From sequence record NC_029316.1: a stretch of 64,000 nt of DNA; one strand, written 5' to 3'. A program made the translations under genes and the position numbers. The notes beneath the pieces were generated by a model. The model was not told the origin of the DNA and did no database searches. It worked only from the letters and a program-made list of their open reading frames with translations. This document shows, piece after piece, positions 1 through 30,485 of the stretch (within the stretch, counting starts at the first letter, position 1; each line of letters opens with the position of its first letter).

Positions 1-111
1 CTGATTGACGACAGCCATGTTTTAGTGAAGGTCTATGAAGACGATCAACCGATTTTCACCATTAAGTTTCAGCTTAATGGTGAAAAGTTAGAAGTTGTTG
101 AGGCGTGGTAA
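1..111 (+). CDS. 3' end of a small hypothetical protein, paralog of 39116-39373
   Basis: Frame 1 reads LIDDSHVLVKVYEDDQPIFTIKFQLNGEKLEVVEAW*, which aligns by eye with VIDSDTMLIKVYGGDEPTFTIKARLVGGKLEVVDVR. Confidence 0.75.
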   Translation: MIDDSHVLVKVYEDDQPIFTIKFQLNGEKLEVVEAW

Positions 112-135
112 CATGGAAAAGCGGGGCGAAGATCC

Positions 136-519
136 GTGGAAAAAGAAATTAGTTTATTGTTAAAAATAATAAAATTCCTCCTAAAGAGCAAAAAGGAATT
201 TGAGGTTACCTATGAAGAAGGTGAAGGAGAGAAGTATGAGGAGGAAGATTTCAAAAAATTTTATTCTCCTTCTATCGAGCTAGAAATTAAGAGCGAAAAT
301 GCACTCAAACACGATATTATAGAAATGTTGGAGAAAAATGGATTTTATTTGGCTAACGGAGCTGAGAATATCGATGTTTATGAAAAGGAAATATATGAAA
401 GGACAGGGAAGAAAAGGAAGGTTGCTGTAAGGTTAGTAATCGAAGTGCATTATGATGATGATGATGTATATAAAATTGTCATTTTTGTGAAAAAATTAAT
501 ATGGAGTATAAAGAGTTGA
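136..519 (+). CDS. Hypothetical protein, paralog of 44617-45006
   Basis: 127-aa ORF; shared motif (N/L)GFY(L/P)xNGAEN with the 44617 ORF. Confidence 0.7.
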   Translation: MEKEISLLLKIIKFLLKSKKEFEVTYEEGEGEKYEEEDFKKFYSPSIELEIKSENALKHDIIEMLEKNGFYLANGAENIDVYEKEIYERTGKKRKVAVRLVIEVHYDDDDVYKIVIFVKKLIWSIKS

Positions 520-564
520 CTTTCTCCACTTAATTTATTCTCTTTTTCTAATCGGGGAGGTAGT

Positions 565-1203
565 ATGATAAATGAGAGATGGGACACGGAGAATAGACTA
601 TCGCAGTATATCCCGCTATATCTTTTGCGATTTACTCTACCTAGCAAGTTTTTAGCTAAGGAAAGGACAAGTGTTGACAAAAAGGAAGACTACACTAACA
701 TATTAATTACTATCAACAACGCGTTGGCATCTAAGCTAGAGTCAATAAGACGATCGGTGTACGAAGAAATAGGAAAGGGTTTTGTATACATAGAGTTGAT
801 GGGTTGGATAGCTGTAGACGATAATGGAGTAAATCACGCTAATATTGCCAATAAGAGGATAGTTGATGAATTAACAAAGGTCGTAGAGAGCGGAAAAGTG
901 ACTTTCAGGGACGGCAGAGTTATCTTAATCCCACCACAACTCATTGAGAAATTAAGGAGAACTATAGCAAATCATTATTACGTAAAAGCGATTAGGATAC
1001 TGGTAGACTATGATAACGCTAAGGAGATAATAGAGCAGGCGTTAAGTCAGCTGAGGGAAGGAATTGAGACTTTACAACAGAAAATTCAGGAAGCTGAAGC
1101 TGAGAAGAAATTAGCATCGCTCAGGAAATATCAGTCTGACAGACAAAAAATTGAAAGACTGTACGAGTCGTTTCTCGATTTCTATAAGGCTAGATTCTCC
1201 TAA
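565..1203 (+). CDS. Hypothetical protein with C-terminal coiled coil
   Basis: 212-aa ORF, SD-like GGGGAGGT upstream. Confidence 0.75.
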   Translation: MINERWDTENRLSQYIPLYLLRFTLPSKFLAKERTSVDKKEDYTNILITINNALASKLESIRRSVYEEIGKGFVYIELMGWIAVDDNGVNHANIANKRIVDELTKVVESGKVTFRDGRVILIPPQLIEKLRRTIANHYYVKAIRILVDYDNAKEIIEQALSQLREGIETLQQKIQEAEAEKKLASLRKYQSDRQKIERLYESFLDFYKARFS

Positions 1204-1241
1204 TTTCTGTAATCACACCTGTGTTCTCGGGGTGGTGTTTT

Positions 1242-1379
1242 ATGGAAATAAGTGAAATAAATGAGCATATAAAAGAATTAGATAAATTGGTAAGTTCAGG
1301 TAACATAAAGGATGCGTTATTTTTAGTTCAAGTAATATATGCAGAGCTATACAATATATATAAGGTTTCTGTGAGGTGA
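1242..1379 (+). CDS. Small 45-aa protein directly upstream of the Tas-like gene (not in ORF track)
   Basis: GGTGGTG SD then ATG: MEISEINEHIKELDKLVSSGNIKDALFLVQVIYAELYNIYKVSVR*; its stop overlaps the SD (GAGGTGA) of the next gene. Confidence 0.6.
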   Translation: MEISEINEHIKELDKLVSSGNIKDALFLVQVIYAELYNIYKVSVR

Positions 1380-1385
1380 GCAAAA

Positions 1386-2417
1386 ATGAGTGAGGTAGAC
1401 CTCGTACATTTAAAAGACCTAGTGGAGTTCAGGGACGACATAATAAAGTTAAGAGTAGCGTTAGGAAACAGGATAGGTGCTAAAAAAGAGAACAATAAGT
1501 GGGTATTCCTAAGGAGATATTCAGTATGCAACAACCATCATATGATATTACTCAAGGAAGACGAAAAACGCGATAAGTGTCCCCTCTGCGGTCAGCCCGT
1601 CAAAATTATTGAAGAAACACCATCTAATGACCTCATAGAGAGGTTTATGGATCTGCTCAGACAACAAGAGATAGTTGAAGGGCTTATTGGTAACGCTGTT
1701 ACGAAATTCCCAGAATTTACTAATTTCTTGGCGTTTATTCGAGGAATAGGATCTGCTAACGCTGGAAGACTTCTCGTTTATGCATACCCACCAAAGTTTC
1801 AGTACAGCATCAATAAATTCAGGAAGTACGCTGGTTTAGCCGTGATGTTCCAGTGTCCTAAATGCGGATATTATTATTACGCTGGTGAGTCCTCAAATGG
1901 TAAACCTGCCCTTCCATCAAAAGACGGTTGGCTGTGTCCAAATGACGGTACGAAACTTATTGGTACGTCAGCGAAGAACGTCAAGTACAATAGGACTGTT
2001 AAGACATTTTTACTAGGAATTCTGGCTAATAACCTCATACTGGCAGGCGGTGTTTATGCAAAGATAATAAAATCATTTAAAGAAGAAATAGCATCTAAGC
2101 ACCCAGACTGGAATAAGCTAAGAGTACAGAGGACTGCGATTAGGAAAGCAATATCCTTATTGATATCACAATACTTTGCTATCTCTTTACATTACCGCGA
2201 AGGAGTACCATTACCTGAGGCTTACAAAGTAGTGTTGGGGAAAGAATACGAAATCCTCAGAAAGCACGAAGATTTCATTGAATCGCCAATTACAGACTAT
2301 TACGTTGACACGAAGACTGTAAAATATAAAGCTAAGTTTGAAAAGATATTGGAAGAATTAGGTATAAACAGAGAGGAGGTGACAACATGGCTGAAGAAGA
2401 AAAAGATTATTAAGTAA
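1386..2417 (+). CDS. tasA: TIGR-associated Nop-domain protein (TasA-like; IS110-related, no RuvC), with two Zn-ribbon insertions
   Basis: IS110/Nop hallmarks: coiled coil LKDLVEFRDDIIKLRVALGNRI, HhH-like FIRGIGSANAGRLL, KFRKYAGL, KYNRTVKTFL and C-terminal QRTAIRKAISLL. No N-terminal DEDD domain. Inserts CNNHH..CPLC and CPKC..CPND. A dual-spacer array starts 1 nt after the stop. Confidence 0.8.
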   Translation: MSEVDLVHLKDLVEFRDDIIKLRVALGNRIGAKKENNKWVFLRRYSVCNNHHMILLKEDEKRDKCPLCGQPVKIIEETPSNDLIERFMDLLRQQEIVEGLIGNAVTKFPEFTNFLAFIRGIGSANAGRLLVYAYPPKFQYSINKFRKYAGLAVMFQCPKCGYYYYAGESSNGKPALPSKDGWLCPNDGTKLIGTSAKNVKYNRTVKTFLLGILANNLILAGGVYAKIIKSFKEEIASKHPDWNKLRVQRTAIRKAISLLISQYFAISLHYREGVPLPEAYKVVLGKEYEILRKHEDFIESPITDYYVDTKTVKYKAKFEKILEELGINREEVTTWLKKKKIIK

Positions 2418-2418
2418 C

Positions 2419-3346
2419 TGCACATAAGCAATATAGTTCGTCAATAATTGCCGTCCTGCACACGAGCAAAAAGTACGCTCAATAAACGCGATATTGCACA
2501 CAAGCAACATATACGTTCAATAAGATACCCATTGCACATAAGCAATCAGCTATTTCAATAATTAATGTACGTGCACACAAGCAACCTGATTGTTGATAAA
2601 AATACCAACTGCACACTAGCATTCTATCCTTTCCCTAAGGACTTAGTTGCACACTAGCAAAATATCCATTCAATAATATTTATATTGCACATAAGCAACA
2701 GGTCTATTCAATAATAAATACGTTGCACATAAGCAAGCTAATAATTCAATAACGATATCTTTGCACACGAGCATTATCATTCCTCAATAACCGTGAAGTT
2801 GCACAAAAGCAATAAAGAGTTTCAATAAAATTGCTCATGCACACAAGCAAGAGAAAACTTCAATAAAGACGTTTATGCACACAAGCAAAGATACAATTCA
2901 ATATCGAAAGATATGCACATAAGCAATCAGCTATTTCAATAATTAATGTACGTGCACACAAGCAATTGCTATGCTCAATAATAGTCGAATTGCACACAAG
3001 CAAAATAATCATTCAATAAACACCTTATTGCACATAAGCAATAAGTATAGTCAATAAACACCCCACTGCACACAAGCAATAACATTATTCAATAATATTT
3101 ATATTGCACATAAGCAAGAAATATCTTCAATAAAAATCACCCTGCACACAAGCAATGAGGTAAGTCAATAACAATCTACCTGCACACCAGCAAAGATAAA
3201 GATCAATAAAAAAAGTTTTGCACATAAGCAACCAGGCTATTCAATAAACCGCATATTGTACACAAGCAAATATAAAGTTCAATAACGGCAAACTTGCACA
3301 TGAGCAAGGGTTGGTTTTCAACAAGAATCCTATTGCACACCTGCCC
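2419..3346 (+). repeat. TIGR-like dual-repeat/dual-spacer array, 24 units of 38 nt (25 edge repeats, the last degenerate)
   Basis: Unit = TGCACAYAAGCAA (13 nt) + 9-nt spacer A + TCAATAA (7 nt) + 9-nt spacer B. Edge repeats at 2419, 2457, 2495, 2533, 2572 ... 3257, 3295, 3334; three units are 39 nt because one spacer is 10 nt. Confidence 0.92.
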
Positions 3347-3369
3347 TTCCAGAGCGGGGAGGAAGTCAG
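3340..3369 (+). mobile_element. IS200/IS605-type right-end remnant
   Basis: CCTGCCCTTCCAGAGCGGGGAGGAAGTCAG: GC hairpin + GGAGGAAGTCAG, typical of Sulfolobales IS605 ends; near copy on the minus strand at 39066-39094. Confidence 0.6.
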
Positions 3370-3371
3370 AA

Positions 3372-3821
3372 ATGGGCAAATTTGATAAAGAATTAATAGA
3401 TATGGTTAAAAAATTAATACAAAAATCTTCTAGTAGCCCATACACAAAAGTAGGTCTTAGCATTTCTGATGAGCATAGGCTACAAAAAATCGACCCTGAG
3501 CTCTATAAACAATATTATGACACAAAAATGATGATAGAAAAGAACAGGGCTGAATTCAAAGAAAGTATTCTTAAATTAATTGATGATATTAATAATGGAA
3601 TTCTAGATAAATATGGTGCAAGGGCGATTTTAGATAGGTTCGATGAGAACGCCATCAACCACCCAGGGTACTATTGCATATCAATAAAAATGAAGAGATT
3701 GCCACGTGAGCAGTTTACAGAGCTTGTTAACAAACTTAAGCAAATAGGGTTCAAGTTTAACGGCTATAATTGGGAATACTGTGATATTATTGGCAATTAT
3801 CCGCGTTTGAGAAAGTCTTAA
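3372..3821 (+). CDS. Hypothetical protein (149 aa)
   Basis: Start moved from 3294 (inside the array) to ATG 3372, which follows a GGAGG SD. Confidence 0.7.
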   Translation: MGKFDKELIDMVKKLIQKSSSSPYTKVGLSISDEHRLQKIDPELYKQYYDTKMMIEKNRAEFKESILKLIDDINNGILDKYGARAILDRFDENAINHPGYYCISIKMKRLPREQFTELVNKLKQIGFKFNGYNWEYCDIIGNYPRLRKS

Positions 3822-3871
3822 AACCGAAGAATCGTAAAAAGCTGAGATTAACGTTTTATATAATTTGGTAC

Positions 3872-4138
3872 CTAATTCTGAATCGTTTCGTTCTCCACTA
3901 TGTCGTCCCCATAATATTCTCTCAATTCATTTATTACAACTTTAGCTATGTCGTCCCCATAATATTCTTTCACCTTTTTGATAAGCTCCTTCAAGTCGTC
4001 ATATATTTCTGCGAAATCACCGTCAATAGTAAAGTTGACTAGTATATATTTACCATCAGTGGTCGGTATTACCATTAGACCTTGATCAATGTTTCTGATT
4101 TTAACTTCAAATGGCAGGAATTTAATTGTTAGATACAT
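3872..4138 (-). CDS. Hypothetical protein with short internal repeat (KEYYGDDI x2)
   Basis: ORF track; MYLTIKF start preferred. Confidence 0.65.
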   Translation of the reverse strand: MYLTIKFLPFEVKIRNIDQGLMVIPTTDGKYILVNFTIDGDFAEIYDDLKELIKKVKEYYGDDIAKVVINELREYYGDDIVENETIQN

Positions 4139-4307
4139 TTTCCTTCCCAAGGATTATGTTTGTTTTAAGTTTTTAAAGATAGTAGTTGTGGGCTAGCTCT
4201 ATCATGATTGAAGTGTAGGGACAAACGGAAATCGGGGGTGTTGTTTCAAATGGAAGAAATTGAAAAGTTAAAAAAGTTGAATGGAAAGGAGACAAAAAAG
4301 GTGATGG

Positions 4308-4565
4308 ATGGTGAAGGTTAAGATACCATATAAATTCCTAGAGGAAAATACATGGTGCGATAGTGACTACTATGGTTGTAGTGGTAGTTGTAGCCACTGC
4401 TATCCGTATGCTGAGAATACTGTTTATGAAGCAGATATTGACGACGTCAAGTTTGATAGAATTGACCTGGAAGATATAGTTGATGAGTACTTAGATGACA
4501 TTATAGATATACTAATGACGAAACATAGGAAGGAATTAGAAAGGAGGATGAACAATGGAACGTGA
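4308..4565 (+). CDS. Small Cys-rich, acidic hypothetical protein
   Basis: CDSDYYGCSGSCSHC cluster; GGTGA SD. Confidence 0.65.
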   Translation: MVKVKIPYKFLEENTWCDSDYYGCSGSCSHCYPYAENTVYEADIDDVKFDRIDLEDIVDEYLDDIIDILMTKHRKELERRMNNGT

Positions 4566-4890
4566 AGACTTTATAGAATACCTTGCAAATTCTGCGTCAG
4601 CTATATTTGACCATAATCAGACAAAGAAGCTTATCGATTATTTTCTCTCGATCTATGGATTATACAAAATGAGAGGGGTTACCATGTCTGCTGATAAGAT
4701 TTACAGATACATTATTAGATCTGTAAAACTCCCATATAGACAACAAGTAATCTTGTACAGCATTTTTTCCGATTATAGTATGCTGACACATGAAGAGAAA
4801 GGAAAATTTTTATACGTACTTATAGAAAAAATGATAGACAAGTTATTGGAGGGTGCTGATGAAGCGGATAATAAACCTCGCATATTCTAG
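4555..4890 (+). CDS. Hypothetical protein
   Basis: 111-aa ORF overlapping the previous stop. Confidence 0.65.
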   Translation: MEREDFIEYLANSASAIFDHNQTKKLIDYFLSIYGLYKMRGVTMSADKIYRYIIRSVKLPYRQQVILYSIFSDYSMLTHEEKGKFLYVLIEKMIDKLLEGADEADNKPRIF

Positions 4891-5117
4891 GGAAGAACTA
4901 AAAGTGCCGACTAAAAGTTTATATTTTTCGGGAAAGAAGTTAAAATAAGGAAGAACTAAAAGATGGGGAGAGCGGGAGGGGTCGTCGTAGCGGGAAGTTG
5001 CCCCGCCTCTTCCAAGGGCGGGGTAAAATTTTAGTTGAAATAAGGAAGAACTGAAATAAAACTAAATGGGAATACTCAACATTCCACTATATAGTTGAAA
5101 TAAGTAAGAACTGAAAG
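4881..5117 (+). CRISPR. Candidate virus-borne mini-CRISPR array (3 full 24-nt repeats + 1 degenerate)
   Basis: GTTAAAATAAGGAAGAACTAAAAG 4939-4962, GTTGAAATAAGGAAGAACTGAAAT 5034-5057, GTTGAAATAAGTAAGAACTGAAAG 5094-5117, partial ending 4904; spacers 34, 71 and 36 nt; 3' GAAAG as in Sulfolobales repeats; no cas genes in the window. Confidence 0.6.
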
Positions 5118-5171
5118 ATGTCAGCTCTAGTTATTCGTTTTTATAAAGGGTGAATTGGTATTTTTCTCGGG

Positions 5172-5951
5172 GTGTTAAATGTGGAAAGTCCTTCCCCTTC
5201 TCCTTATACTGTCTCTAAAGAAGCAATGAACTTTCTCAATGTTTTCTTTTCAAATAAGCCGATAAAAAACGAGAAGGTTATAATAAACGCTCTTAAAAAT
5301 GGGTTTGTAAGCAGTGTTATCCTTGATATATCTCCTAATGCGTTAAGCGAATTTGAGGATATCATAAAGAAATATTTTGATGTAGACCTTATCGACGACG
5401 AATATTACAAAACTGTAGAGCTGGGTATTATAGCGATGGTAATAACACTACTGGCTCATAGAGTAAGGTTAATTGAACTGCAAGATTTAGCCGAACCGCT
5501 AAATAAATACGCTTCTTACCTTTCATCACTAAGGTTTAAAGCACCTAAAAAGGACGTAATGCCATTGTTAGCCCTAGGTCTTGTAACTGAAGAAGGTGGT
5601 GGGTTCTATAAGGTTACTGGTCTTGCATTGTATCTCATTAATTTTTTATTAACAGTAAATATGAGCATCACATTACCTAAGGCATGCCTGAAAGAGCTTA
5701 TTGAAGATTTGAATAACATACTGTTGTTTCATAAATTTATGGTCGAACGTGTGACTAGCTTGCTTTATGAAGCACCTTGGTCATTGTATTCAGCGTATCA
5801 CGGTTCCAGCAGTTACGATGACTTAATGGCTGAGCTTGATTTCGAAAGCATATTAAATACGCTAAATCTATTGAGGGAAAAACTAAAACCACCGTACAAA
5901 TATGAAATACCAGTAATTATGGGAGAAAGGAAACTTTCTCAATTAATTTAA
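5172..5951 (+). CDS. Hypothetical protein
   Basis: 259-aa ORF, GTG start. Confidence 0.7.
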   Translation: MLNVESPSPSPYTVSKEAMNFLNVFFSNKPIKNEKVIINALKNGFVSSVILDISPNALSEFEDIIKKYFDVDLIDDEYYKTVELGIIAMVITLLAHRVRLIELQDLAEPLNKYASYLSSLRFKAPKKDVMPLLALGLVTEEGGGFYKVTGLALYLINFLLTVNMSITLPKACLKELIEDLNNILLFHKFMVERVTSLLYEAPWSLYSAYHGSSSYDDLMAELDFESILNTLNLLREKLKPPYKYEIPVIMGERKLSQLI

Positions 5952-5966
5952 AACGGGGCGAAAAAA

Positions 5967-6848
5967 ATGAAAGTTGAACTAGTTTCTTATACAAAAGATG
6001 GAGAAAGAGTTGTTGCCATTGCTTCTAAGATGAGCAGGTCTAGAAAGGGTTGGGATTACCACGAGAAGACAATGACGGATGAGGAAGTAGAAGTATGGAT
6101 CCGTGACGCTATCATTCACGGCTATTGGTCACCACTAGAACACAGTAGTTATACCTTCTCAATAGAGGGTATAAGCAGAGTTGCCTCTCATCAGCTAGTG
6201 AGACACCGCATTGCATCATACACTCAAATGAGCCATAGGTTTGCTAAGCCCGTTGATGAGTACTACCAACCAGTAACTCCGCCTTCTGCGGAAAAGAGGA
6301 ACGAGGAACTAGTTAAGAAGGCTTACGACGACGCTTACAAATACTACTACGAGCTATTACAGAACGGTGTTCCAGAGGAAGATGCCAGATACGTCCTACC
6401 TAATGGAGTAAATACAAACATCGTTGTGACAATGAACGCCAGAGAGTTATACAACTTCTTTGCCCTAAGACTATGCTCAAGAGCACAGTGGGAAATACGT
6501 CAAGTTGCTTGGAAAATGCTAGAAGAAGTAAAGAAAGTCCATCCCCGTCTATTTAAGTATGCTGGGGCTAATTGTATAATATTAAACAATTTAACTAGTG
6601 ACAGACTGATGACTGTAGAGAACGTCCTTAACGGAATATGGAGATTTGAGATTAGCAGGTGTCCAGAAGGCGTATATCGTGATGGAATACCTAAGTGCAT
6701 ACTTTCCAGCATGGGTCTTGCTGACCTATATCAGTGCATTCATGACTGCAAAGTTCATTTTGGCGACCCTGGTGACGACGACAGTGGTTGCATAGCCTGG
6801 TGTAAGAAAAAGTACGCTGACGGCTTCATAGGACAAGGTGGGGCATGA
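5967..6848 (+). CDS. thyX: FAD-dependent thymidylate synthase ThyX
   Basis: ThyX signature [14 protein letters not shown]; HWSPLEH-like GYWSPLEH; EDARYVLP; [23 protein letters not shown]. Confidence 0.95.
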
Positions 6849-7507
6849 TGGTTTCAGTAGTAGATTTAATAAAAGAACATTTAGATTTTTTAAGCATAAA
6901 ATATATTATAACTAGAGAAGCCGATACAGAATTCACTTTTCATCTCGATTACATCTCTAAAAACAAAGTTAATGTACTGTCAAAAATACTAAGCGAGAAC
7001 GGATTTTTTGTGACTTTCAATAATAGTCAATACATAGTAATGATGGATAAAAATGGGCAACGTGTAAGTTTTATGTTTGGTGATGATTTGCTGTATAAAA
7101 TAAGGGTTTATACTACAGCAAAGCCTAAGCATTTTGCAGTAAAGGTGCATAGGTTAAGGAGTGTTAGGGTACAATATAGAGACGATATTGTTGAACACAA
7201 CAACATTATAATTACATTAAAGATCTCAAAGAAAATCAAGGATTTGCTTATTTTATATTCACGCAAAATAGGTAAAACTGCTGGCGAATTAATACGCTGT
7301 ACGCTTGCTAATACTATTTTAAAAGAGTTTGATGCCGATTACGATGATAAGAAGCTTCTTGACGGTGATATTAGTGTGTTGTCGTTAAAGATAAATAAGA
7401 AGTTGTTAGAGAAGCTCGACAATTTTGCAACAAATCATAAAGTTACGAGGTCTGCAGTGGTAAGGTACATAGTGTACTTGATACTTAAAAACGCAGGAGT
7501 ATTCTAA
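6845..7507 (+). CDS. Protein with two C-terminal ribbon-helix-helix-like repeats
   Basis: [13 protein letters not shown]...TAGELIR and [17 protein letters not shown]...[10 protein letters not shown]. Confidence 0.65.
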
Positions 7508-7552
7508 CGGTTTTTTCTTCTGCAAACACAGATGTGATTTCGGGGAGAAGCC

Positions 7553-8044
7553 ATGCTCCAAAATATGTTGTTAAAAAATATAAATACCCCTCCTAAGGAG
7601 GAAATAGAGAAATTTAGGCAAATGCTGTTTTTTAAGGTAGCTGAATGCACTAAAGATAAAAATTTTGCTAAGTGTGTTATCAACAATATAATTGAGAATC
7701 TGAAGTACATAGACGTTTCTATTCTTTTATACCCACAAACAAAGCGTAAGTGTAGGATGATAAAAGGTTTTGAAAACTCCCAGGCTGAGGTTATAAAATA
7801 CGACGACGAGCCTTATTTACTCTGCACGGACGTCCTTTTAGTTTACAAGCTACCAGATAGCATAATGACGTTATTATTTACGCTTTCAGGCAACGAGATT
7901 ATATCATCCTATGTAGTTTCTAATATTCCGCAATTGCCTTTAAAGATAGAGGTACCTTTTAATATAGAGGTTGTTGGGGACAACCATATATATACTGTGT
8001 ATAGAAGAAACTCTTCATATGGGGTGAAAATAAATGAAGAATAA
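7553..8044 (+). CDS. Hypothetical protein
   Basis: 163-aa ORF. Confidence 0.65.
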   Translation: MLQNMLLKNINTPPKEEIEKFRQMLFFKVAECTKDKNFAKCVINNIIENLKYIDVSILLYPQTKRKCRMIKGFENSQAEVIKYDDEPYLLCTDVLLVYKLPDSIMTLLFTLSGNEIISSYVVSNIPQLPLKIEVPFNIEVVGDNHIYTVYRRNSSYGVKINEE

Positions 8045-8450
8045 CGGTGTAGAATTACTCATCATCTTGCCTAGAAATAATTGCACCATAAAGAAGAACA
8101 AGTATCTCAGCTACGTAATAAAAGATAACAAATGTTACGTTTATCTTGTCTATTCTAACAAGTATTATCTTACTACCTCTTTACCTTCTAACCTCATCTT
8201 AAACGGTAGAGAAGCTACAAAAATTTTGCACCACATGCTGAATAAGAGCGATGAGGAACTGTATAACGCTATCCTCTCGTCTGGGGATACGGCAAGTAAA
8301 AAGACTTATAGAATAAACCTTACAGTATCTCCTATAGTTGCTCCAAAGTTATTCAAACTAGCCTTCATGTTCAATGTAAAAATTTCTACAATCATCCGCA
8401 TGTTAATATTATCATATTACCGTTCCACGACGATAAAGTTAGCACCTTAA
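8034..8450 (+). CDS. Hypothetical protein with C-terminal RHH-like motif
   Basis: YRINLTVSPIVAPKLFKLAFMFNVKISTIIRMLI. Confidence 0.55.
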   Translation: MKNNGVELLIILPRNNCTIKKNKYLSYVIKDNKCYVYLVYSNKYYLTTSLPSNLILNGREATKILHHMLNKSDEELYNAILSSGDTASKKTYRINLTVSPIVAPKLFKLAFMFNVKISTIIRMLILSYYRSTTIKLAP

Positions 8451-8495
8451 TTTTTTATGCACTATTTTTCTCACATTTTGGATAATATTACTCCT

Positions 8496-9392
8496 TTATT
8501 TCTTTCTATAGAATATCAGGATTTTGCCATTTTTGTTAGTTAAACTAAAACCGAGTTCTTCTACTTCTTTTATAGGTGGCTTCTTATGGTATTCCATTAT
8601 TATCTTCTCAAAATACTTAAGTGACTCCTTCTCATGTCTCAGTATATCGTACTCACAACCTTCACAGTCCATCTTTATCATGAACGGGTTATCTAATTCT
8701 CTAACTAAATCGCTTATCGTAACGCTCTTAACTGCGATACCTGACCCCTTCGGTCTAACATAGACTCCTGCACTGCCTACGGCGTCATGATCCTTAATTT
8801 TCACTACACGGGATTCATAATTTATTATTGCATTCAGTATCCTTACTCTGTTGTTTAATTCGTTTAGCTTGATATTTTCTAATGCAATGTTATAAGGAGT
8901 CGGTAAAGGTTCTATTCCCAGAACTTTACTTGCACCCCATAATGCAAAGAAGATAGGCGAATCACCTATTCCTGCACCTATATCAACTACGTCTCCTTTG
9001 ATTTCTCTAAAGTCGTTATAAATTTGCTCATCAAACACCTCGTGGATAGTTTGCTCTAGGGCTAATTTTCCCTTATAATACTTAAGTAACTTGACAGAAC
9101 CTAAATCTAGATTTTTATACATATAATTATCTTTAGTCTTCCATTCATGGTACTTTAGAAAACATAATATAAAACATTCAAGCGGAGTTTTACATTCTCC
9201 TTCGCAGTCTTCTATTTCTCTCGGGTACTCACGCATTTCCCTGTAGTACTCACTCAACGCTTTTAGTGCAGGTGCTGATAAATATACTGTCCTACCATTT
9301 CTTAACTCAGCCTTTGACTTTCTATTCAATATAACATTAAAAAGTACTTCTGGATAGTTTTTATATACCATAACAAATTTCCAGATATCCAT
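8496..9392 (-). CDS. FkbM-family SAM-dependent methyltransferase
   Basis: VVDIGAGIGDS motif I, KVLGIEP, IKMDCEGCEY; ATG 9392 lies about 30 nt after TTTAAATA. Confidence 0.85.
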   Translation of the reverse strand: MDIWKFVMVYKNYPEVLFNVILNRKSKAELRNGRTVYLSAPALKALSEYYREMREYPREIEDCEGECKTPLECFILCFLKYHEWKTKDNYMYKNLDLGSVKLLKYYKGKLALEQTIHEVFDEQIYNDFREIKGDVVDIGAGIGDSPIFFALWGASKVLGIEPLPTPYNIALENIKLNELNNRVRILNAIINYESRVVKIKDHDAVGSAGVYVRPKGSGIAVKSVTISDLVRELDNPFMIKMDCEGCEYDILRHEKESLKYFEKIIMEYHKKPPIKEVEELGFSLTNKNGKILIFYRKK

Positions 9393-9497
9393 TGCAGGTG
9401 AAATGGATTGCGAGTATTTAAACAGATTTCGCACTTTTGCAGAACTTCAACGGGGAGGAGGTCAGTTATTATACTCTGTTTGGAGAAACGGAAAAGC

Positions 9498-10355
9498 TCA
9501 CCCTAACATGTCTAATTTATTCTTCACAGTGTTAATAACATATTCTACTTGGTTTTTTATCGAATCTGTAATATCTTTTACTACCTTATCTTCTACTTTA
9601 ACGTGCTTACCATTAATGGTCACATTTTCCCCTTCAATTTCAATTTCATAATCGTTTGTCTTTATCTTTGATTGTAGGACTAAATTTATTACCTTAGATA
9701 AAATACGCCTTGAATATTTATCGATACCAATCTCAATTCTGAAAGCTTCTTTAGGTTCATCGTTACCTTGTTTTTTGTAAATAGTGAGTGTATCTCCATA
9801 AGTGTATGAAACATTATAAATATACTCTGGAGTGTAAGCCCAATAACCGTTCAACTTAGGATTTCTAAATTCATATTGGTAATATATAATAACTTTATCA
9901 AAATCTAACGTAAAGTGACAGGATGAGAAATTGTTCTTGACATAAGAGAGTATAGTATCGAAAAGTTTGTCTATCAAATTTATCATTTTATTGTTGTCTA
10001 CTGTTATCTCTTCACCATTAATCTTTGCCTCAGAAGAAGCTTTAGTGTATGTTAAATCCACTGAATTACCAAACTTACTTAAAATCTTCATAATCTGTTG
10101 TGAAAAATTAGAATTATCAATATTTCGATTAACCAATACAAAACTTCCCAACTCATAATCGTCCACGCTTACCTTATAACCATTTTTGTTTATAGTGAAT
10201 GTAATATCTCCACCATCATATTCTAATCTAAGGAAAAGTATCTCGTCTGGAAGTACGTTGTAACGGATAACAGATGTATATAGATCATTCTTTGCTAAAA
10301 ATGCATTTTTTTCCCGTATTTGTTGCTTATTTTCGTCCCAGAATTCCTGTGCCAT
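9498..10355 (-). CDS. Hypothetical protein
   Basis: 285-aa ORF with TATA-like TTTAATAA upstream. Confidence 0.75.
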   Translation of the reverse strand: MAQEFWDENKQQIREKNAFLAKNDLYTSVIRYNVLPDEILFLRLEYDGGDITFTINKNGYKVSVDDYELGSFVLVNRNIDNSNFSQQIMKILSKFGNSVDLTYTKASSEAKINGEEITVDNNKMINLIDKLFDTILSYVKNNFSSCHFTLDFDKVIIYYQYEFRNPKLNGYWAYTPEYIYNVSYTYGDTLTIYKKQGNDEPKEAFRIEIGIDKYSRRILSKVINLVLQSKIKTNDYEIEIEGENVTINGKHVKVEDKVVKDITDSIKNQVEYVINTVKNKLDMLG

Positions 10356-29999: not shown

Positions 30000-30485
30000 C
30001 TAATAAAAAATAATTACTTTTTTAAGACTTTTTGATAAGACGCCCATGATCTTATCGTCTACAATGTCTGTCATAATAACGATATCGCTACTGCTTGAAA
30101 AATAATAGCTAAGCACTGCATTACATATGCAGTTACCTTTCCCGTGTAGTATCAGGATGCCGTCTGTTTTTAATTTATTAATATATTCACTTATTTCCTT
30201 ATCTCCACCCAGTTCGCACTTTATTATGCTCCCTTTTCCGTACAACGTAACTGGTAAATGATGGATATTAGGGTAAATTTCAAACTCGCTATCTCCTAAT
30301 ATCCCCTCTGCGATTCTAAAGGTCGTATACCCTTGCATCACCATCCTGGTTGATACATGAGAGTAACAGATGTTCTTCATTATTTCGTTCTCAAAATTAC
30401 ACCTAATTGTAAGAATTTCGGCGTCTAAAGGAGGGACAAACTCTCTTAATTTTTCCTTACTATCGATAACTATTGTACTCATCAA
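30000..30485 (-). CDS. Hypothetical protein
   Basis: 161-aa ORF. Confidence 0.7.
   Translation of the reverse strand: MMSTIVIDSKEKLREFVPPLDAEILTIRCNFENEIMKNICYSHVSTRMVMQGYTTFRIAEGILGDSEFEIYPNIHHLPVTLYGKGSIIKCELGGDKEISEYINKLKTDGILILHGKGNCICNAVLSYYFSSSSDIVIMTDIVDDKIMGVLSKSLKKVIIFY

What the first reader, a model, noticed from the sequence alone, without database searches (positions are those of the whole stretch)
1386..3346. TIGR-Tas-like RNA-guided system in an archaeal spindle virus
Seen: a Nop/IS110-fold gene whose stop is followed 1 nt later by 24 tandem 38-nt units, each with two constant repeats (TGCACAYAAGCAA and TCAATAA) alternating with two variable 9-nt spacers. Known: TIGR arrays have this edge-repeat/spacer A/loop-repeat/spacer B layout with about 9-nt spacers, lie beside Nop-domain Tas proteins, and are processed into guides whose two spacers read opposite DNA strands without a PAM. 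Inference: the virus makes 23 distinct guides (one unit is duplicated) for programmable DNA targeting of the host or competing elements. Standard annotation would likely call this an IS110 transposase plus a repeat. I cannot tell whether this locus has already been catalogued.
Basis: partly seen in the sequence, partly recalled or inferred. Interest (0 to 1): 0.95.

Follow-up and report, generated by a model that had tools for sequence, protein, structure and literature searches.

The report
Known TIGR-TasA system in ATSV
The repeat array and its neighbouring gene in Acidianus tailed spindle virus are a genuine TIGR-Tas RNA-guide system of the nuclease-free TasA type, but this locus is already in the 2025 paper that defined the family, and what its guides target is still unknown.

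Summary
The window is Acidianus tailed spindle virus (ATSV). ORF 1386-2417 (ATSV_B343) is followed 1 nt later by 24 units of 38/39 nt: TGCACAYAAGCAA, 9 nt, TCAATAA, 9 nt. That gives 23 distinct guides.

A family profile hits the solved TasR (9MTY, E 3e-44) and TasH (3e-25). A confident AlphaFold model also matches TasR best. There is no nuclease domain, so this is a TasA: RNA-guided DNA binding, not cutting.

It is not new. Faure et al. 2025 cite the ATSV array, and their seed alignment for the TIGR profile contains A0A125SJ55, which is 100% identical to this protein.

Beyond that paper I found four things:
- 26 of 26 held loci of the ATSV-type clade (15 distinct arrays) have the array directly 3' of the gene.
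- One 37-unit array is identical in six assemblies.
- Some guides are conserved between diverged viruses, and half-spacers get re-paired.
- No target was found for 256 guides in about 440 kb of Sulfolobales viral DNA, or for five conserved guides in the large collections scanned (one in viral, genome and metagenome collections; four in viral contigs only).

The system differs from the canonical one in its 38-nt unit, two zinc-ribbon insertions and a Lys at the processing-His position.

The parts
1386..2417 (+). tasA gene (ATSV_B343, 343 aa; UniProt A0A125SJ55): solo Nop-domain Tas protein with no nuclease domain
   Evidence: ORF. GenBank 'hypothetical protein'. Profile hits to TasR 9MTY at 2.8e-44 and TasH at 3.3e-25. 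AF2 model pLDDT 85.6 / pTM 0.80. Foldseek top hits are TasR, TasH, then IS621. 100% identical to BFVD A0A125SJ55.
1389..1700 (+). Predicted coiled-coil arm (helices aa 2-30 and 81-105) with a zinc-ribbon insertion at its tip (aa 32-77; invariant C48, H52, C65, C68)
   Evidence: Secondary structure of the model. Invariant residues in a 20-sequence alignment. Weak zinc-ribbon Pfam/PDB hits. The helix starts at residue 2, so there is no room for an N-terminal nuclease.
1710..2261 (+). Nop C-terminal domain core (aa 109-292), including the helix-hairpin-helix GIG motif (G120, G122)
   Evidence: Aligned to TasR residues 123-214 and 218-326 and to TasH 69-297. G120, G122 and Y224 are invariant in 50 distant relatives.
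1842..1970 (+). Second zinc-ribbon insertion (aa 153-195; invariant C157, C160, C184) at the position of the TasR 'wedge' loop
   Evidence: The insertion lies between the two TasR-aligned blocks, after the YAGL motif. TasR wedge = G210-K230 per preprint 10.64898/2026.09.09.750476. Beta strands in the model.
2223..2267 (+). Candidate tigRNA-processing residues: Y280 (2223-2225), K286 (2241-2243), H294 (2265-2267)
   Evidence: Y280 aligns with SpTasH Y289 and is Y in 46/50 relatives. The SpTasH H296 column is K286 in ATSV (invariant in the family). H294 is invariant inside a clade-specific insertion.
2419..3333 (+). TIGR array: 24 units of edge repeat TGCACAYAAGCAA + spacer A (9) + loop repeat TCAATAA + spacer B (9)
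   Evidence: GenBank repeat_region 9232-10146. No ORF spans it and the 38-nt period is not a multiple of 3. No Rfam family matches.
2533..2571 (+). Unit 4 (TCAGCTATT | TTAATGTACG), duplicated as unit 14 (2914-2952) and also present in a relative whose Tas is 89% identical
2572..2647 (+). Units 5 and 6 with degenerate loop repeats (TTGATAA, TCCCTAA); possibly non-functional guides
   Evidence: Both are retained in the 99%-identical relative L006.
3143..3180 (+). Unit 20 (TGAGGTAAG | CAATCTACC): guide conserved 18/18 in L009 although tasA third-codon identity is only 0.69. Predicted target: TGAGGTAAGGGTAGATTG
   Evidence: Target geometry. No relevant database hit.
3295..3340 (+). Conserved terminal unit (GGGTTGGTTT | TCAACAA | GAATCCTAT) with a small hairpin plus T-run (3293-3318), then a 3'-truncated edge repeat TGCACAC (3334-3340)
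   Evidence: Near-identical terminal units in the L009, L010 and L002 arrays.

Best explanation
This is a dual-repeat TIGR-Tas system of the TasA (nuclease-free) type, carried by the archaeal virus ATSV.

Shown here:
- The gene encodes a Nop-domain Tas protein.
- The array has the TIGR layout.
- Gene and array travel together as one module.

Inferred by analogy with studied TIGR systems:
- The array is transcribed with, or just after, tasA on the + strand.
- A TasA dimer binds the precursor. It is cut inside the variable centre of each 13-nt edge repeat, giving ~38-nt tigRNAs of the form (Y)AAGCAA - spacer A - UCAAUAA - spacer B - UGCACA.
- Each tigRNA directs the dimer to an 18-bp DNA site that reads spacer A + reverse complement of spacer B, with one spacer pairing to each strand.
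- With no nuclease, the complex most likely sits on the DNA and blocks transcription or replication of a host or rival-element target.

The repertoire looks inherited and slowly reshuffled rather than rapidly acquired.
For: Identity:
- Profile A1 (ATSV family only) hits TasR 9MTY at E 8e-5.
- The broadened profile A2 hits TasR at 2.8e-44 and TasH at 3.3e-25, against IS621 at 9e-5.
- Foldseek ranks TasR (2.7e-5), then TasH, then IS621. 9MTY is the TaTasR structure.
- The protein is in the published TIGR seed alignment.

Array:
- Edge repeat UGC-ACAYAA-GCAA mirrors TaTasR UGC-GA-GCCA, with the same G:C and C:G closing pairs. These are the only recurring pairs when units are folded.

Linkage:
- All 26 held loci of the ATSV-type clade (15 distinct arrays of 2-50 units) have the array directly 3' of the gene on the same strand, while flanking genes differ.
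- ATV has the same upstream gene pair but neither gene nor array.

Function of TasA:
- Nuclease-free TasA proteins bind target DNA and repress transcription in the literature (bioRxiv 10.64898/2026.09.09.750476).

Constraint:
- Five guides shared by ATSV and L009 are 86/90 nt identical, while tasA third-codon positions are 69% identical.
Against: - No expression, processing or binding data exist for this locus.
- No target was found. 256 guides against 271 kb of ATSV-like DNA, and against 168 kb of five other Sulfolobales viruses, gave hit counts equal to mis-paired controls.
- Exact scans of five conserved guides returned only unrelated sequences at about chance frequency. One guide was scanned in viral, genome and metagenome collections; the other four in viral contigs only.
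- The loop repeat (UCAAUAA, 7 nt) does not show the UG...CCA motif or a closing pair like the edge repeat. The published rule that edge and loop motifs covary is therefore only partly met.
- The processing His of SpTasH aligns with a Lys.
- Frequent re-pairing of half-spacers would destroy 18-bp specificity, which sits awkwardly with every guide being functional.
Confidence: 0.85

Rival explanations
1. The complex guides DNA cutting or recombination after all. A nuclease, integrase or other effector would be recruited in trans by the TasA-tigRNA complex, for example to bias inheritance of rival elements or to help integration through the sharp DNA bend.
For: Faure et al. raise both ideas for TasA. 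The two zinc-ribbon insertions could be protein-protein or DNA contacts.
Against: No partner gene is conserved next to the module; the neighbours differ between relatives. Studied TasA proteins act as plain binders or repressors.
Confidence: 0.1
2. The guides act on RNA, not DNA: a box C/D-like system that binds or modifies host or viral RNAs through 9-nt pairings.
For: The Nop domain is shared with box C/D snoRNP proteins, and archaea use such guides.
Against: - No box C (RUGAUGA) or box D (CUGA) motifs and no Rfam snoRNA hit.
- No N-terminal fibrillarin-binding domain.
- Sequence and fold are far closer to DNA-targeting TasR/TasH.
Confidence: 0.04
3. The array is largely a relic or a structural DNA element (for example protein-binding iterons, or a recombination hotspot). 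Most units would not be used as guides.
For: - No targets were found.
- Half-spacers are re-paired by recombination.
- Some units are degenerate.
- One array is unchanged in six assemblies.
Against: - Repeats are kept near-perfect over about 500 copies in 15 arrays while spacers are free to vary.
- Linkage and orientation to tasA are strict.
- Retained guides evolve more slowly than synonymous sites.
- Comparable arrays are processed into guides in three tested systems.
Confidence: 0.05
4. It is a CRISPR array or an IS110-type mobile element.
For: The GenBank record flags a 'possible viral CRISPR locus' nearby. The protein shares a domain with IS110 transposases.
Against: - The CRISPR note refers to a different locus (window 4888-5120).
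- TIGR repeats are 13 and 7 nt with 9-nt spacers, not 24-37-nt repeats.
- The protein lacks the DEDD/RuvC and serine-recombinase parts of IS110, and Pfam PF01548/PF02371 do not hit.
- IS621 matches only the Nop-like part, about 40 orders of magnitude more weakly than TasR.
Confidence: 0.01

Closest known systems
TIGR-TasA systems (FpTasA, PlTasA, MbTasA; Faure et al. 2025, PMC12045711; bioRxiv 10.64898/2026.09.09.750476 and 10.64898/2026.08.11.744272)
   Same: Solo Nop-domain protein with a coiled-coil arm and no nuclease. An adjacent array of dual-spacer units. Expected RNA-guided binding of a split 18-bp DNA site.
   Different: - 38-nt unit (13-nt edge, 7-nt loop) instead of 36 nt.
- Zinc ribbons inserted at the coiled-coil tip and at the wedge position.
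- Lys at the processing-His column.
- Hyperthermophilic archaeal virus host.
- PlTasA, MbTasA and BlTasA use stem-loop arrays, whereas this array is of the dual-repeat type.
TaTasR (PDB 9MTY), dual-repeat TIGR from a Thermoproteota archaeon
   Same: Best sequence and fold match. The edge repeat is built the same way (UGC...GCCA vs UGC...GCAA). 9-nt spacers. Archaeal thermophile origin.
   Different: TasR carries an active N-terminal RuvC nuclease and cuts both strands. ATSV_B343 starts directly with the coiled coil.
SpTasH (PDB 9W03 and others), Salicola phage
   Same: Virus-encoded dual-repeat TIGR. The processing Tyr is conserved (Y289 = ATSV Y280).
   Different: N-terminal HNH nuclease, 8-nt spacers, His296 present.
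IS110/IS621 bridge-RNA recombinases (PDB 8WT6)
   Same: Share the RNA-binding Nop-like domain.
   Different: They have DEDD and serine-recombinase catalytic domains, a single bridge RNA and no array. The match to ATSV is weak (E ~1e-4).
Virus-borne mini-CRISPR arrays of Sulfolobales viruses
   Same: Guide arrays carried by archaeal viruses, thought to serve conflicts between viruses. ATSV has a candidate of this kind 1.5 kb downstream.
   Different: They depend on host Cas proteins and have long repeats and spacers, and their spacers match related viruses. ATSV-type TIGR guides do not match related viruses.

Membership tests
TIGR-Tas (dual-repeat type) | [quoted passage not shown] | tested here: met
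   24 units, 20 of them exactly 13+9+7+9. Spacer columns carry <=0.6 bit. Across 229 distinct 9/9 guides from relatives every spacer column carries <=0.32 bit.
TIGR-Tas (dual-repeat type) | Nop-domain Tas protein encoded next to the array | tested here: met
   TasR 9MTY E 2.8e-44 and TasH 3.3e-25 by profile. Foldseek top hits are TasR/TasH. The array starts 1 nt after the stop codon. Linkage holds in 26/26 held loci of the ATSV-type clade.
TIGR-Tas (dual-repeat type) | Listed in the published family data set | tested here: met
   A0A125SJ55 is in Data S1, the seed alignment of the custom TIGR HMM, and is 100% identical over 343 aa. The ATSV genome paper is cited for the array.
TIGR-Tas (dual-repeat type) | Coiled-coil dimerisation arm preceding the Nop core | tested here: inconclusive
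   Two long helices (aa 2-30, 81-105) are predicted and align to the TasH/TasR arm. Dimer formation itself was not modelled.
TIGR-Tas (dual-repeat type) | Repeats start with box D (UG) and end with box C (CCA) that pair, and the motifs covary between edge and loop repeats | tested here: inconclusive
   Edge repeat: UG...CAA with G2:C11 and C3:G10 pairs, as in TaTasR. Loop repeat UCAAUAA shares only the U and the terminal AA, and it cannot form the closing pair.
TIGR-Tas (dual-repeat type) | Tyr/His dyad for tigRNA processing on the loop after the last Nop helix (SpTasH Y289/H296) | tested here: inconclusive
   Y280 is aligned and conserved in 46/50 relatives. The His column is K286. An invariant H294 lies 8 residues downstream in a clade-specific insertion.
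TIGR-Tas (dual-repeat type) | Typical (descriptive, not defining) dimensions: 8-12-nt repeats, 36-nt unit | tested here: not met
   Edge repeat 13 nt, loop repeat 7 nt, unit 38 nt. The authors describe ranges with exceptions and still include this locus.
TIGR-Tas (dual-repeat type) | [quoted passage not shown] | tested here: met
   Truncated TGCACAC at 3334-3340. A hairpin plus T-run lies in the conserved terminal unit, 3293-3318. The array begins with a full, not 5'-truncated, edge repeat.
TIGR-Tas (dual-repeat type) | Array transcribed and processed to unit-length tigRNAs that co-purify with Tas | not testable with these tools
   Needs small-RNA sequencing or pull-down.
TIGR-Tas (dual-repeat type) | tigRNA directs binding to a split 18-bp DNA target (spacer A + revcomp spacer B) | not testable with these tools
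   The geometry was taken from published oligos. No natural target was found.
TasA subtype | No HNH or RuvC nuclease domain | tested here: met
   The coiled-coil helix begins at residue 2. There are no nuclease Pfam hits.
IS110 transposase | N-terminal DEDD/RuvC-like domain plus C-terminal catalytic serine domain; terminal inverted or sub-terminal ends; bridge RNA | tested here: not met
   No N-terminal domain. PF01548/PF02371 are not hit. IS621 aligns only over about 90 Nop-like residues at E 9e-5.
CRISPR array | Single repeat of ~24-37 nt alternating with ~30-40-nt spacers | tested here: not met
   Two alternating repeats of 13 and 7 nt with 9-nt spacers. No Rfam CRISPR-DR hit.
Box C/D sRNA + Nop5 | C box RUGAUGA and D box CUGA forming K-turns; Nop5 N-terminal fibrillarin-binding domain | tested here: not met
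   The motifs are absent from the units. No Rfam snoRNA hit. No N-terminal domain.

The most novel reading that the evidence does not exclude
ATSV-type viruses keep a heritable, slowly reshuffled library of TasA guides. A subset of guides is under purifying selection and aimed at host (Acidianus) chromosomal or unrelated-element DNA rather than at sibling viruses. This would be a virus-encoded RNA-guided repressor set that reprograms the host. It would work at about 80 C through a distinct TasA clade with a 38-nt guide, zinc-ribbon tip and wedge, and a Tyr/Lys or Tyr/His294 processing site. New guide combinations would arise by unequal recombination at either repeat.
Probability: 0.3. Interest if true: 0.6.

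Novelty: already known. Interest (0 to 1): 0.3.

Why it matters
TIGR-Tas is a recently described, compact, PAM-free RNA-guided DNA-targeting family of high interest for genome tools. Its natural role is unknown.

ATSV is one of the few TIGR carriers that is a named, imaged virus with an identified host, so it is a good place to ask what the guides are for. That has been evident since the 2025 paper, so the locus itself is not a discovery.

The small additions here narrow the question:
- strict module linkage
- array stability across assemblies
- conserved guides despite scrambled order
- half-spacer re-pairing
- no targets in sibling viruses

They argue against CRISPR-like rapid adaptation and against sibling-virus exclusion. 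They point to the host genome as the place to look.

Tried and rejected
1. Single-sequence Pfam and PDB searches gave only weak zinc-ribbon hits. A family profile was needed.
2. Self-regulation: no ATSV site lies within 1 mismatch of any guide.
3. Sibling-virus targeting: 256 guides against 271 kb of ATSV-like DNA gave 0 hits at <=1 mismatch. Two-mismatch hits numbered 10, against 6-12 in controls.
4. Other Sulfolobales viruses (STIV1, AFV1, ARV2, ATV, SMV4; 168 kb): one 17/18 match to SMV4 from a relative's guide. About 0.1 is expected by chance, so it is not significant.
5. Exact scans of five conserved or near-hit guide targets. One target was scanned in IMG/VR, GTDB genomes and JGI metagenomes; the other four in IMG/VR only. 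All hits were in unrelated taxa at or below chance frequency, with no protein similarity to archaeal viruses.
6. Conserved partner genes: the downstream B149 and the upstream genes are not conserved across relatives.
7. Rfam: no family matches either repeat locus.
8. Sister clade P0072 (39% identity): the contig ends 640 nt upstream of the gene and no array is visible, so it is uninformative. P0073's contig is too short.
9. The Hochstein 2016 paper could not be read. Table S1 of Faure et al. is truncated in the held copy.
Full report
**Where the window comes from.** Bases 1-6000 are 100% identical to Acidianus tailed spindle virus (ATSV; KU645528 / NC_029316, 70.8-kb circular genome, host Acidianus sp. 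CHAS). Window position = record position minus 6812. In that record the ORF is ATSV_B343, 'hypothetical protein'. The array is an unlabelled repeat_region (record 9232-10146).

**The observation.** It is correct in every particular.
- The ORF runs 1386-2417, with its stop at 2415-2417. One base later, at 2419, the first repeat begins.
- There are 24 units in strict register. 21 are 38 nt and three are 39 nt.
- Column statistics show a 13-nt edge repeat TGCACAYAAGCAA whose two central positions vary. It is followed by a free 9-nt block, a 7-nt loop repeat TCAATAA, and another free 9-nt block.
- Units 4 and 14 are identical, which leaves 23 distinct guides.
- Units 5 and 6 have degenerate loop repeats. 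A truncated 25th edge repeat closes the array at 3334-3340.
- The edge repeat occurs nowhere else in the 64-kb window: 24 matches against 2.8 expected, and 0 of 100 shuffles reach that.
- The period is not a multiple of three and no ORF spans the array, so it is not coding.

**The protein.**
- On its own the sequence gives only weak zinc-ribbon hits.
- Seventy-one close homologues (60-99% identity), all from hot-spring metagenomes, were found.
- A profile of 20 of them hits PDB 9MTY at E 8e-5. 9MTY is the TaTasR cryo-EM structure of the founding TIGR paper.
- A search of 1.8 billion cluster representatives found 310 distant relatives.
- A profile that includes 44 of those relatives hits TasR at 2.8e-44 and SpTasH at 3.3e-25. 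The IS621 and ISCro4 recombinases reach only ~1e-4.
- An AlphaFold2 model is confident (pLDDT 85.6, pTM 0.80). Its best PDB matches are TasR, then TasH, then IS621.
- The model starts with a long helix at residue 2, so there is no N-terminal RuvC or HNH domain. The protein is therefore a TasA.
- It has two zinc-ribbon insertions. One sits at the tip of the coiled-coil arm (aa 32-77; C48, H52, C65, C68 invariant). The other sits where TasR has its strand-separating wedge loop (aa 153-195).
- In dual-repeat Tas proteins a Tyr/His dyad cuts the precursor (SpTasH Y289/H296).
  - The tyrosine is conserved here: Y280, which is Y in 46 of 50 relatives.
  - The aligned histidine column is an invariant lysine (K286).
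  - An invariant H294 lies eight residues on, in an insertion peculiar to this clade.

**The RNA side.** The published TaTasR tigRNA1 is AGCCA-UGCAAGCCC-UGAAACCCA-UUGCCUUAG-UGCG. Its edge repeat therefore reads UGC-GA-GCCA. ATSV's reads UGC-ACAYAA-GCAA, with the same start, the same end and the same two closing pairs, but a centre four bases longer. Folding modelled units shows no stable structure except that closing GCA/UGC helix, as described for dual-repeat tigRNAs. The 7-nt loop repeat UCAAUAA is shorter than usual and cannot form the equivalent pair, so the 'edge and loop motifs covary' rule is only partly met. No Rfam family matches.

**Already known.** Faure et al. [quoted passage not shown] They cite the ATSV genome paper for that, and cite it again for TIGR loci in archaeal viruses. 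Their Data S1 is the seed alignment for the custom TIGR HMM, and it contains 'A0A125SJ55.pdb'. The BFVD model of that accession is 343 aa, 100% identical to the window protein, with TM 0.98 to my model. This exact gene therefore helped define the family.

**What comparison adds.**
- I collected 26 loci of the ATSV-type clade, the window included, from metagenomes and IMG/VR. Every one has the array directly 3' of the gene on the same strand. They make up 15 distinct arrays of 2 to 50 units.
- A more distant relative (P0072, 39% identity) sits on a contig that ends 640 nt upstream of its gene and shows no array in the part held, so it says nothing either way.
- Flanking genes differ between relatives. 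The related virus ATV has the same upstream gene pair but neither gene nor array. The module is therefore tasA plus its array.
- Arrays are not fast-changing. One 37-unit array is identical in six assemblies from different samples.
- ATSV and a relative with a 99%-identical protein differ by a few point changes and one one-period deletion between loop repeats. That deletion fused spacer A of unit 2 to spacer B of unit 3.
- Such re-pairing is common. Among 221 guides, 10 A halves and 15 B halves have more than one partner, against 0.7 and 0.2 in shuffles. Some of these cases are point variants rather than recombinants.
- Against L009 (89% protein identity) only five ATSV guides survive, and in scrambled order. 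Those five are 86/90 nt identical, while tasA third-codon positions are 69% identical.
- Retained guides thus look constrained, or recently exchanged between viruses.
- The terminal unit is conserved between arrays and carries a hairpin plus T-run.

**Targets.** From the published oligos, the target strand reads spacer A + reverse complement of spacer B.
- No guide has a site within one mismatch in ATSV itself or in 271 kb of ATSV-like DNA. Two-mismatch counts equal those of mis-paired and wrong-geometry controls.
- Five other Sulfolobales viruses (168 kb) gave one 17/18 match, from a relative's guide to SMV4. That is about what chance allows.
- Exact scans of the best-conserved guides gave only unrelated hits at or below chance frequency. 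One target was scanned in IMG/VR, GTDB genomes and JGI metagenomes; the other four in IMG/VR only.
- The guides are therefore not aimed at the virus itself or its siblings. The host chromosome and unrelated elements could not be searched properly with the tools at hand.

**Verdict.** The correction is that this is a nuclease-free TasA, so binding or repression is expected rather than cutting. It is, however, a published example of a published family. What remains open, and interesting, is its biological role in an archaeal virus.

Noticed in passing
window 4888-5120: Four copies of a ~25-nt repeat (AGTTGAAATAAGGAAGAACTGAAAG) with 58/95/60-nt spacing. It ends in CTGAAAG, which from memory resembles Sulfolobales CRISPR repeats. 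This, not the TIGR array, is the record's 'possible viral CRISPR locus'. No Rfam hit. ATSV may therefore carry both a mini-CRISPR-like array and a TIGR array within 2.5 kb.
   Followed up: partly
window 3344-3366; L002 101-123(-); L044 4101-4123(-); L054 565-587(+): A 23-nt motif, CCCTTCCAGNNCGGGGAGGAAGT, sits directly after the ATSV array and 5 nt before the B149 start codon. It recurs exactly in other gene contexts in related viruses, including just upstream of a 39%-identical tas gene. It could be a shared regulatory or ribosome-binding element.
   Followed up: partly
L048 (ATV, NC_007409) 6820-8517: ATV has an ORF211/ORF45 pair of the same sizes and order as ATSV C212/B45. No tas gene or edge repeat follows it, so it looks like a natural empty site for the module. 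Homology of the pair was judged from size and order only.
   Followed up: partly
L002 7058-9112; L010 3088-4620; L040 14541-14730: Some relatives' arrays contain an internal copy of the conserved 'terminal' unit, so they look like two arrays joined end to end. L040 has an extra 5-unit array 2.5 kb downstream of the main one.
   Followed up: no
L049 (SMV4, NC_029011) 30418-30435: A guide of relative L036 (TAGATCTAA|GAATTTGAC) matches SMV4 at 17 of 18 positions. The site is inside an unannotated 34-codon ORF between gp27 and gp28. About 0.1 such hits are expected by chance. The exact target occurs only in unrelated IMG/VR contigs.
   Followed up: yes
L009 9355-10179 and 12026-12931: In the 89%-identical relative, a 274-aa gene lies between the array and the B149 homologue, and a DDE transposase gene lies further downstream. 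Both are absent from ATSV at those positions.
   Followed up: no
L038 1-328 and 6865-7192: This IMG/VR contig carries the array at one end and an inverted copy at the other. It is probably an assembly artefact at a repeat.
   Followed up: no
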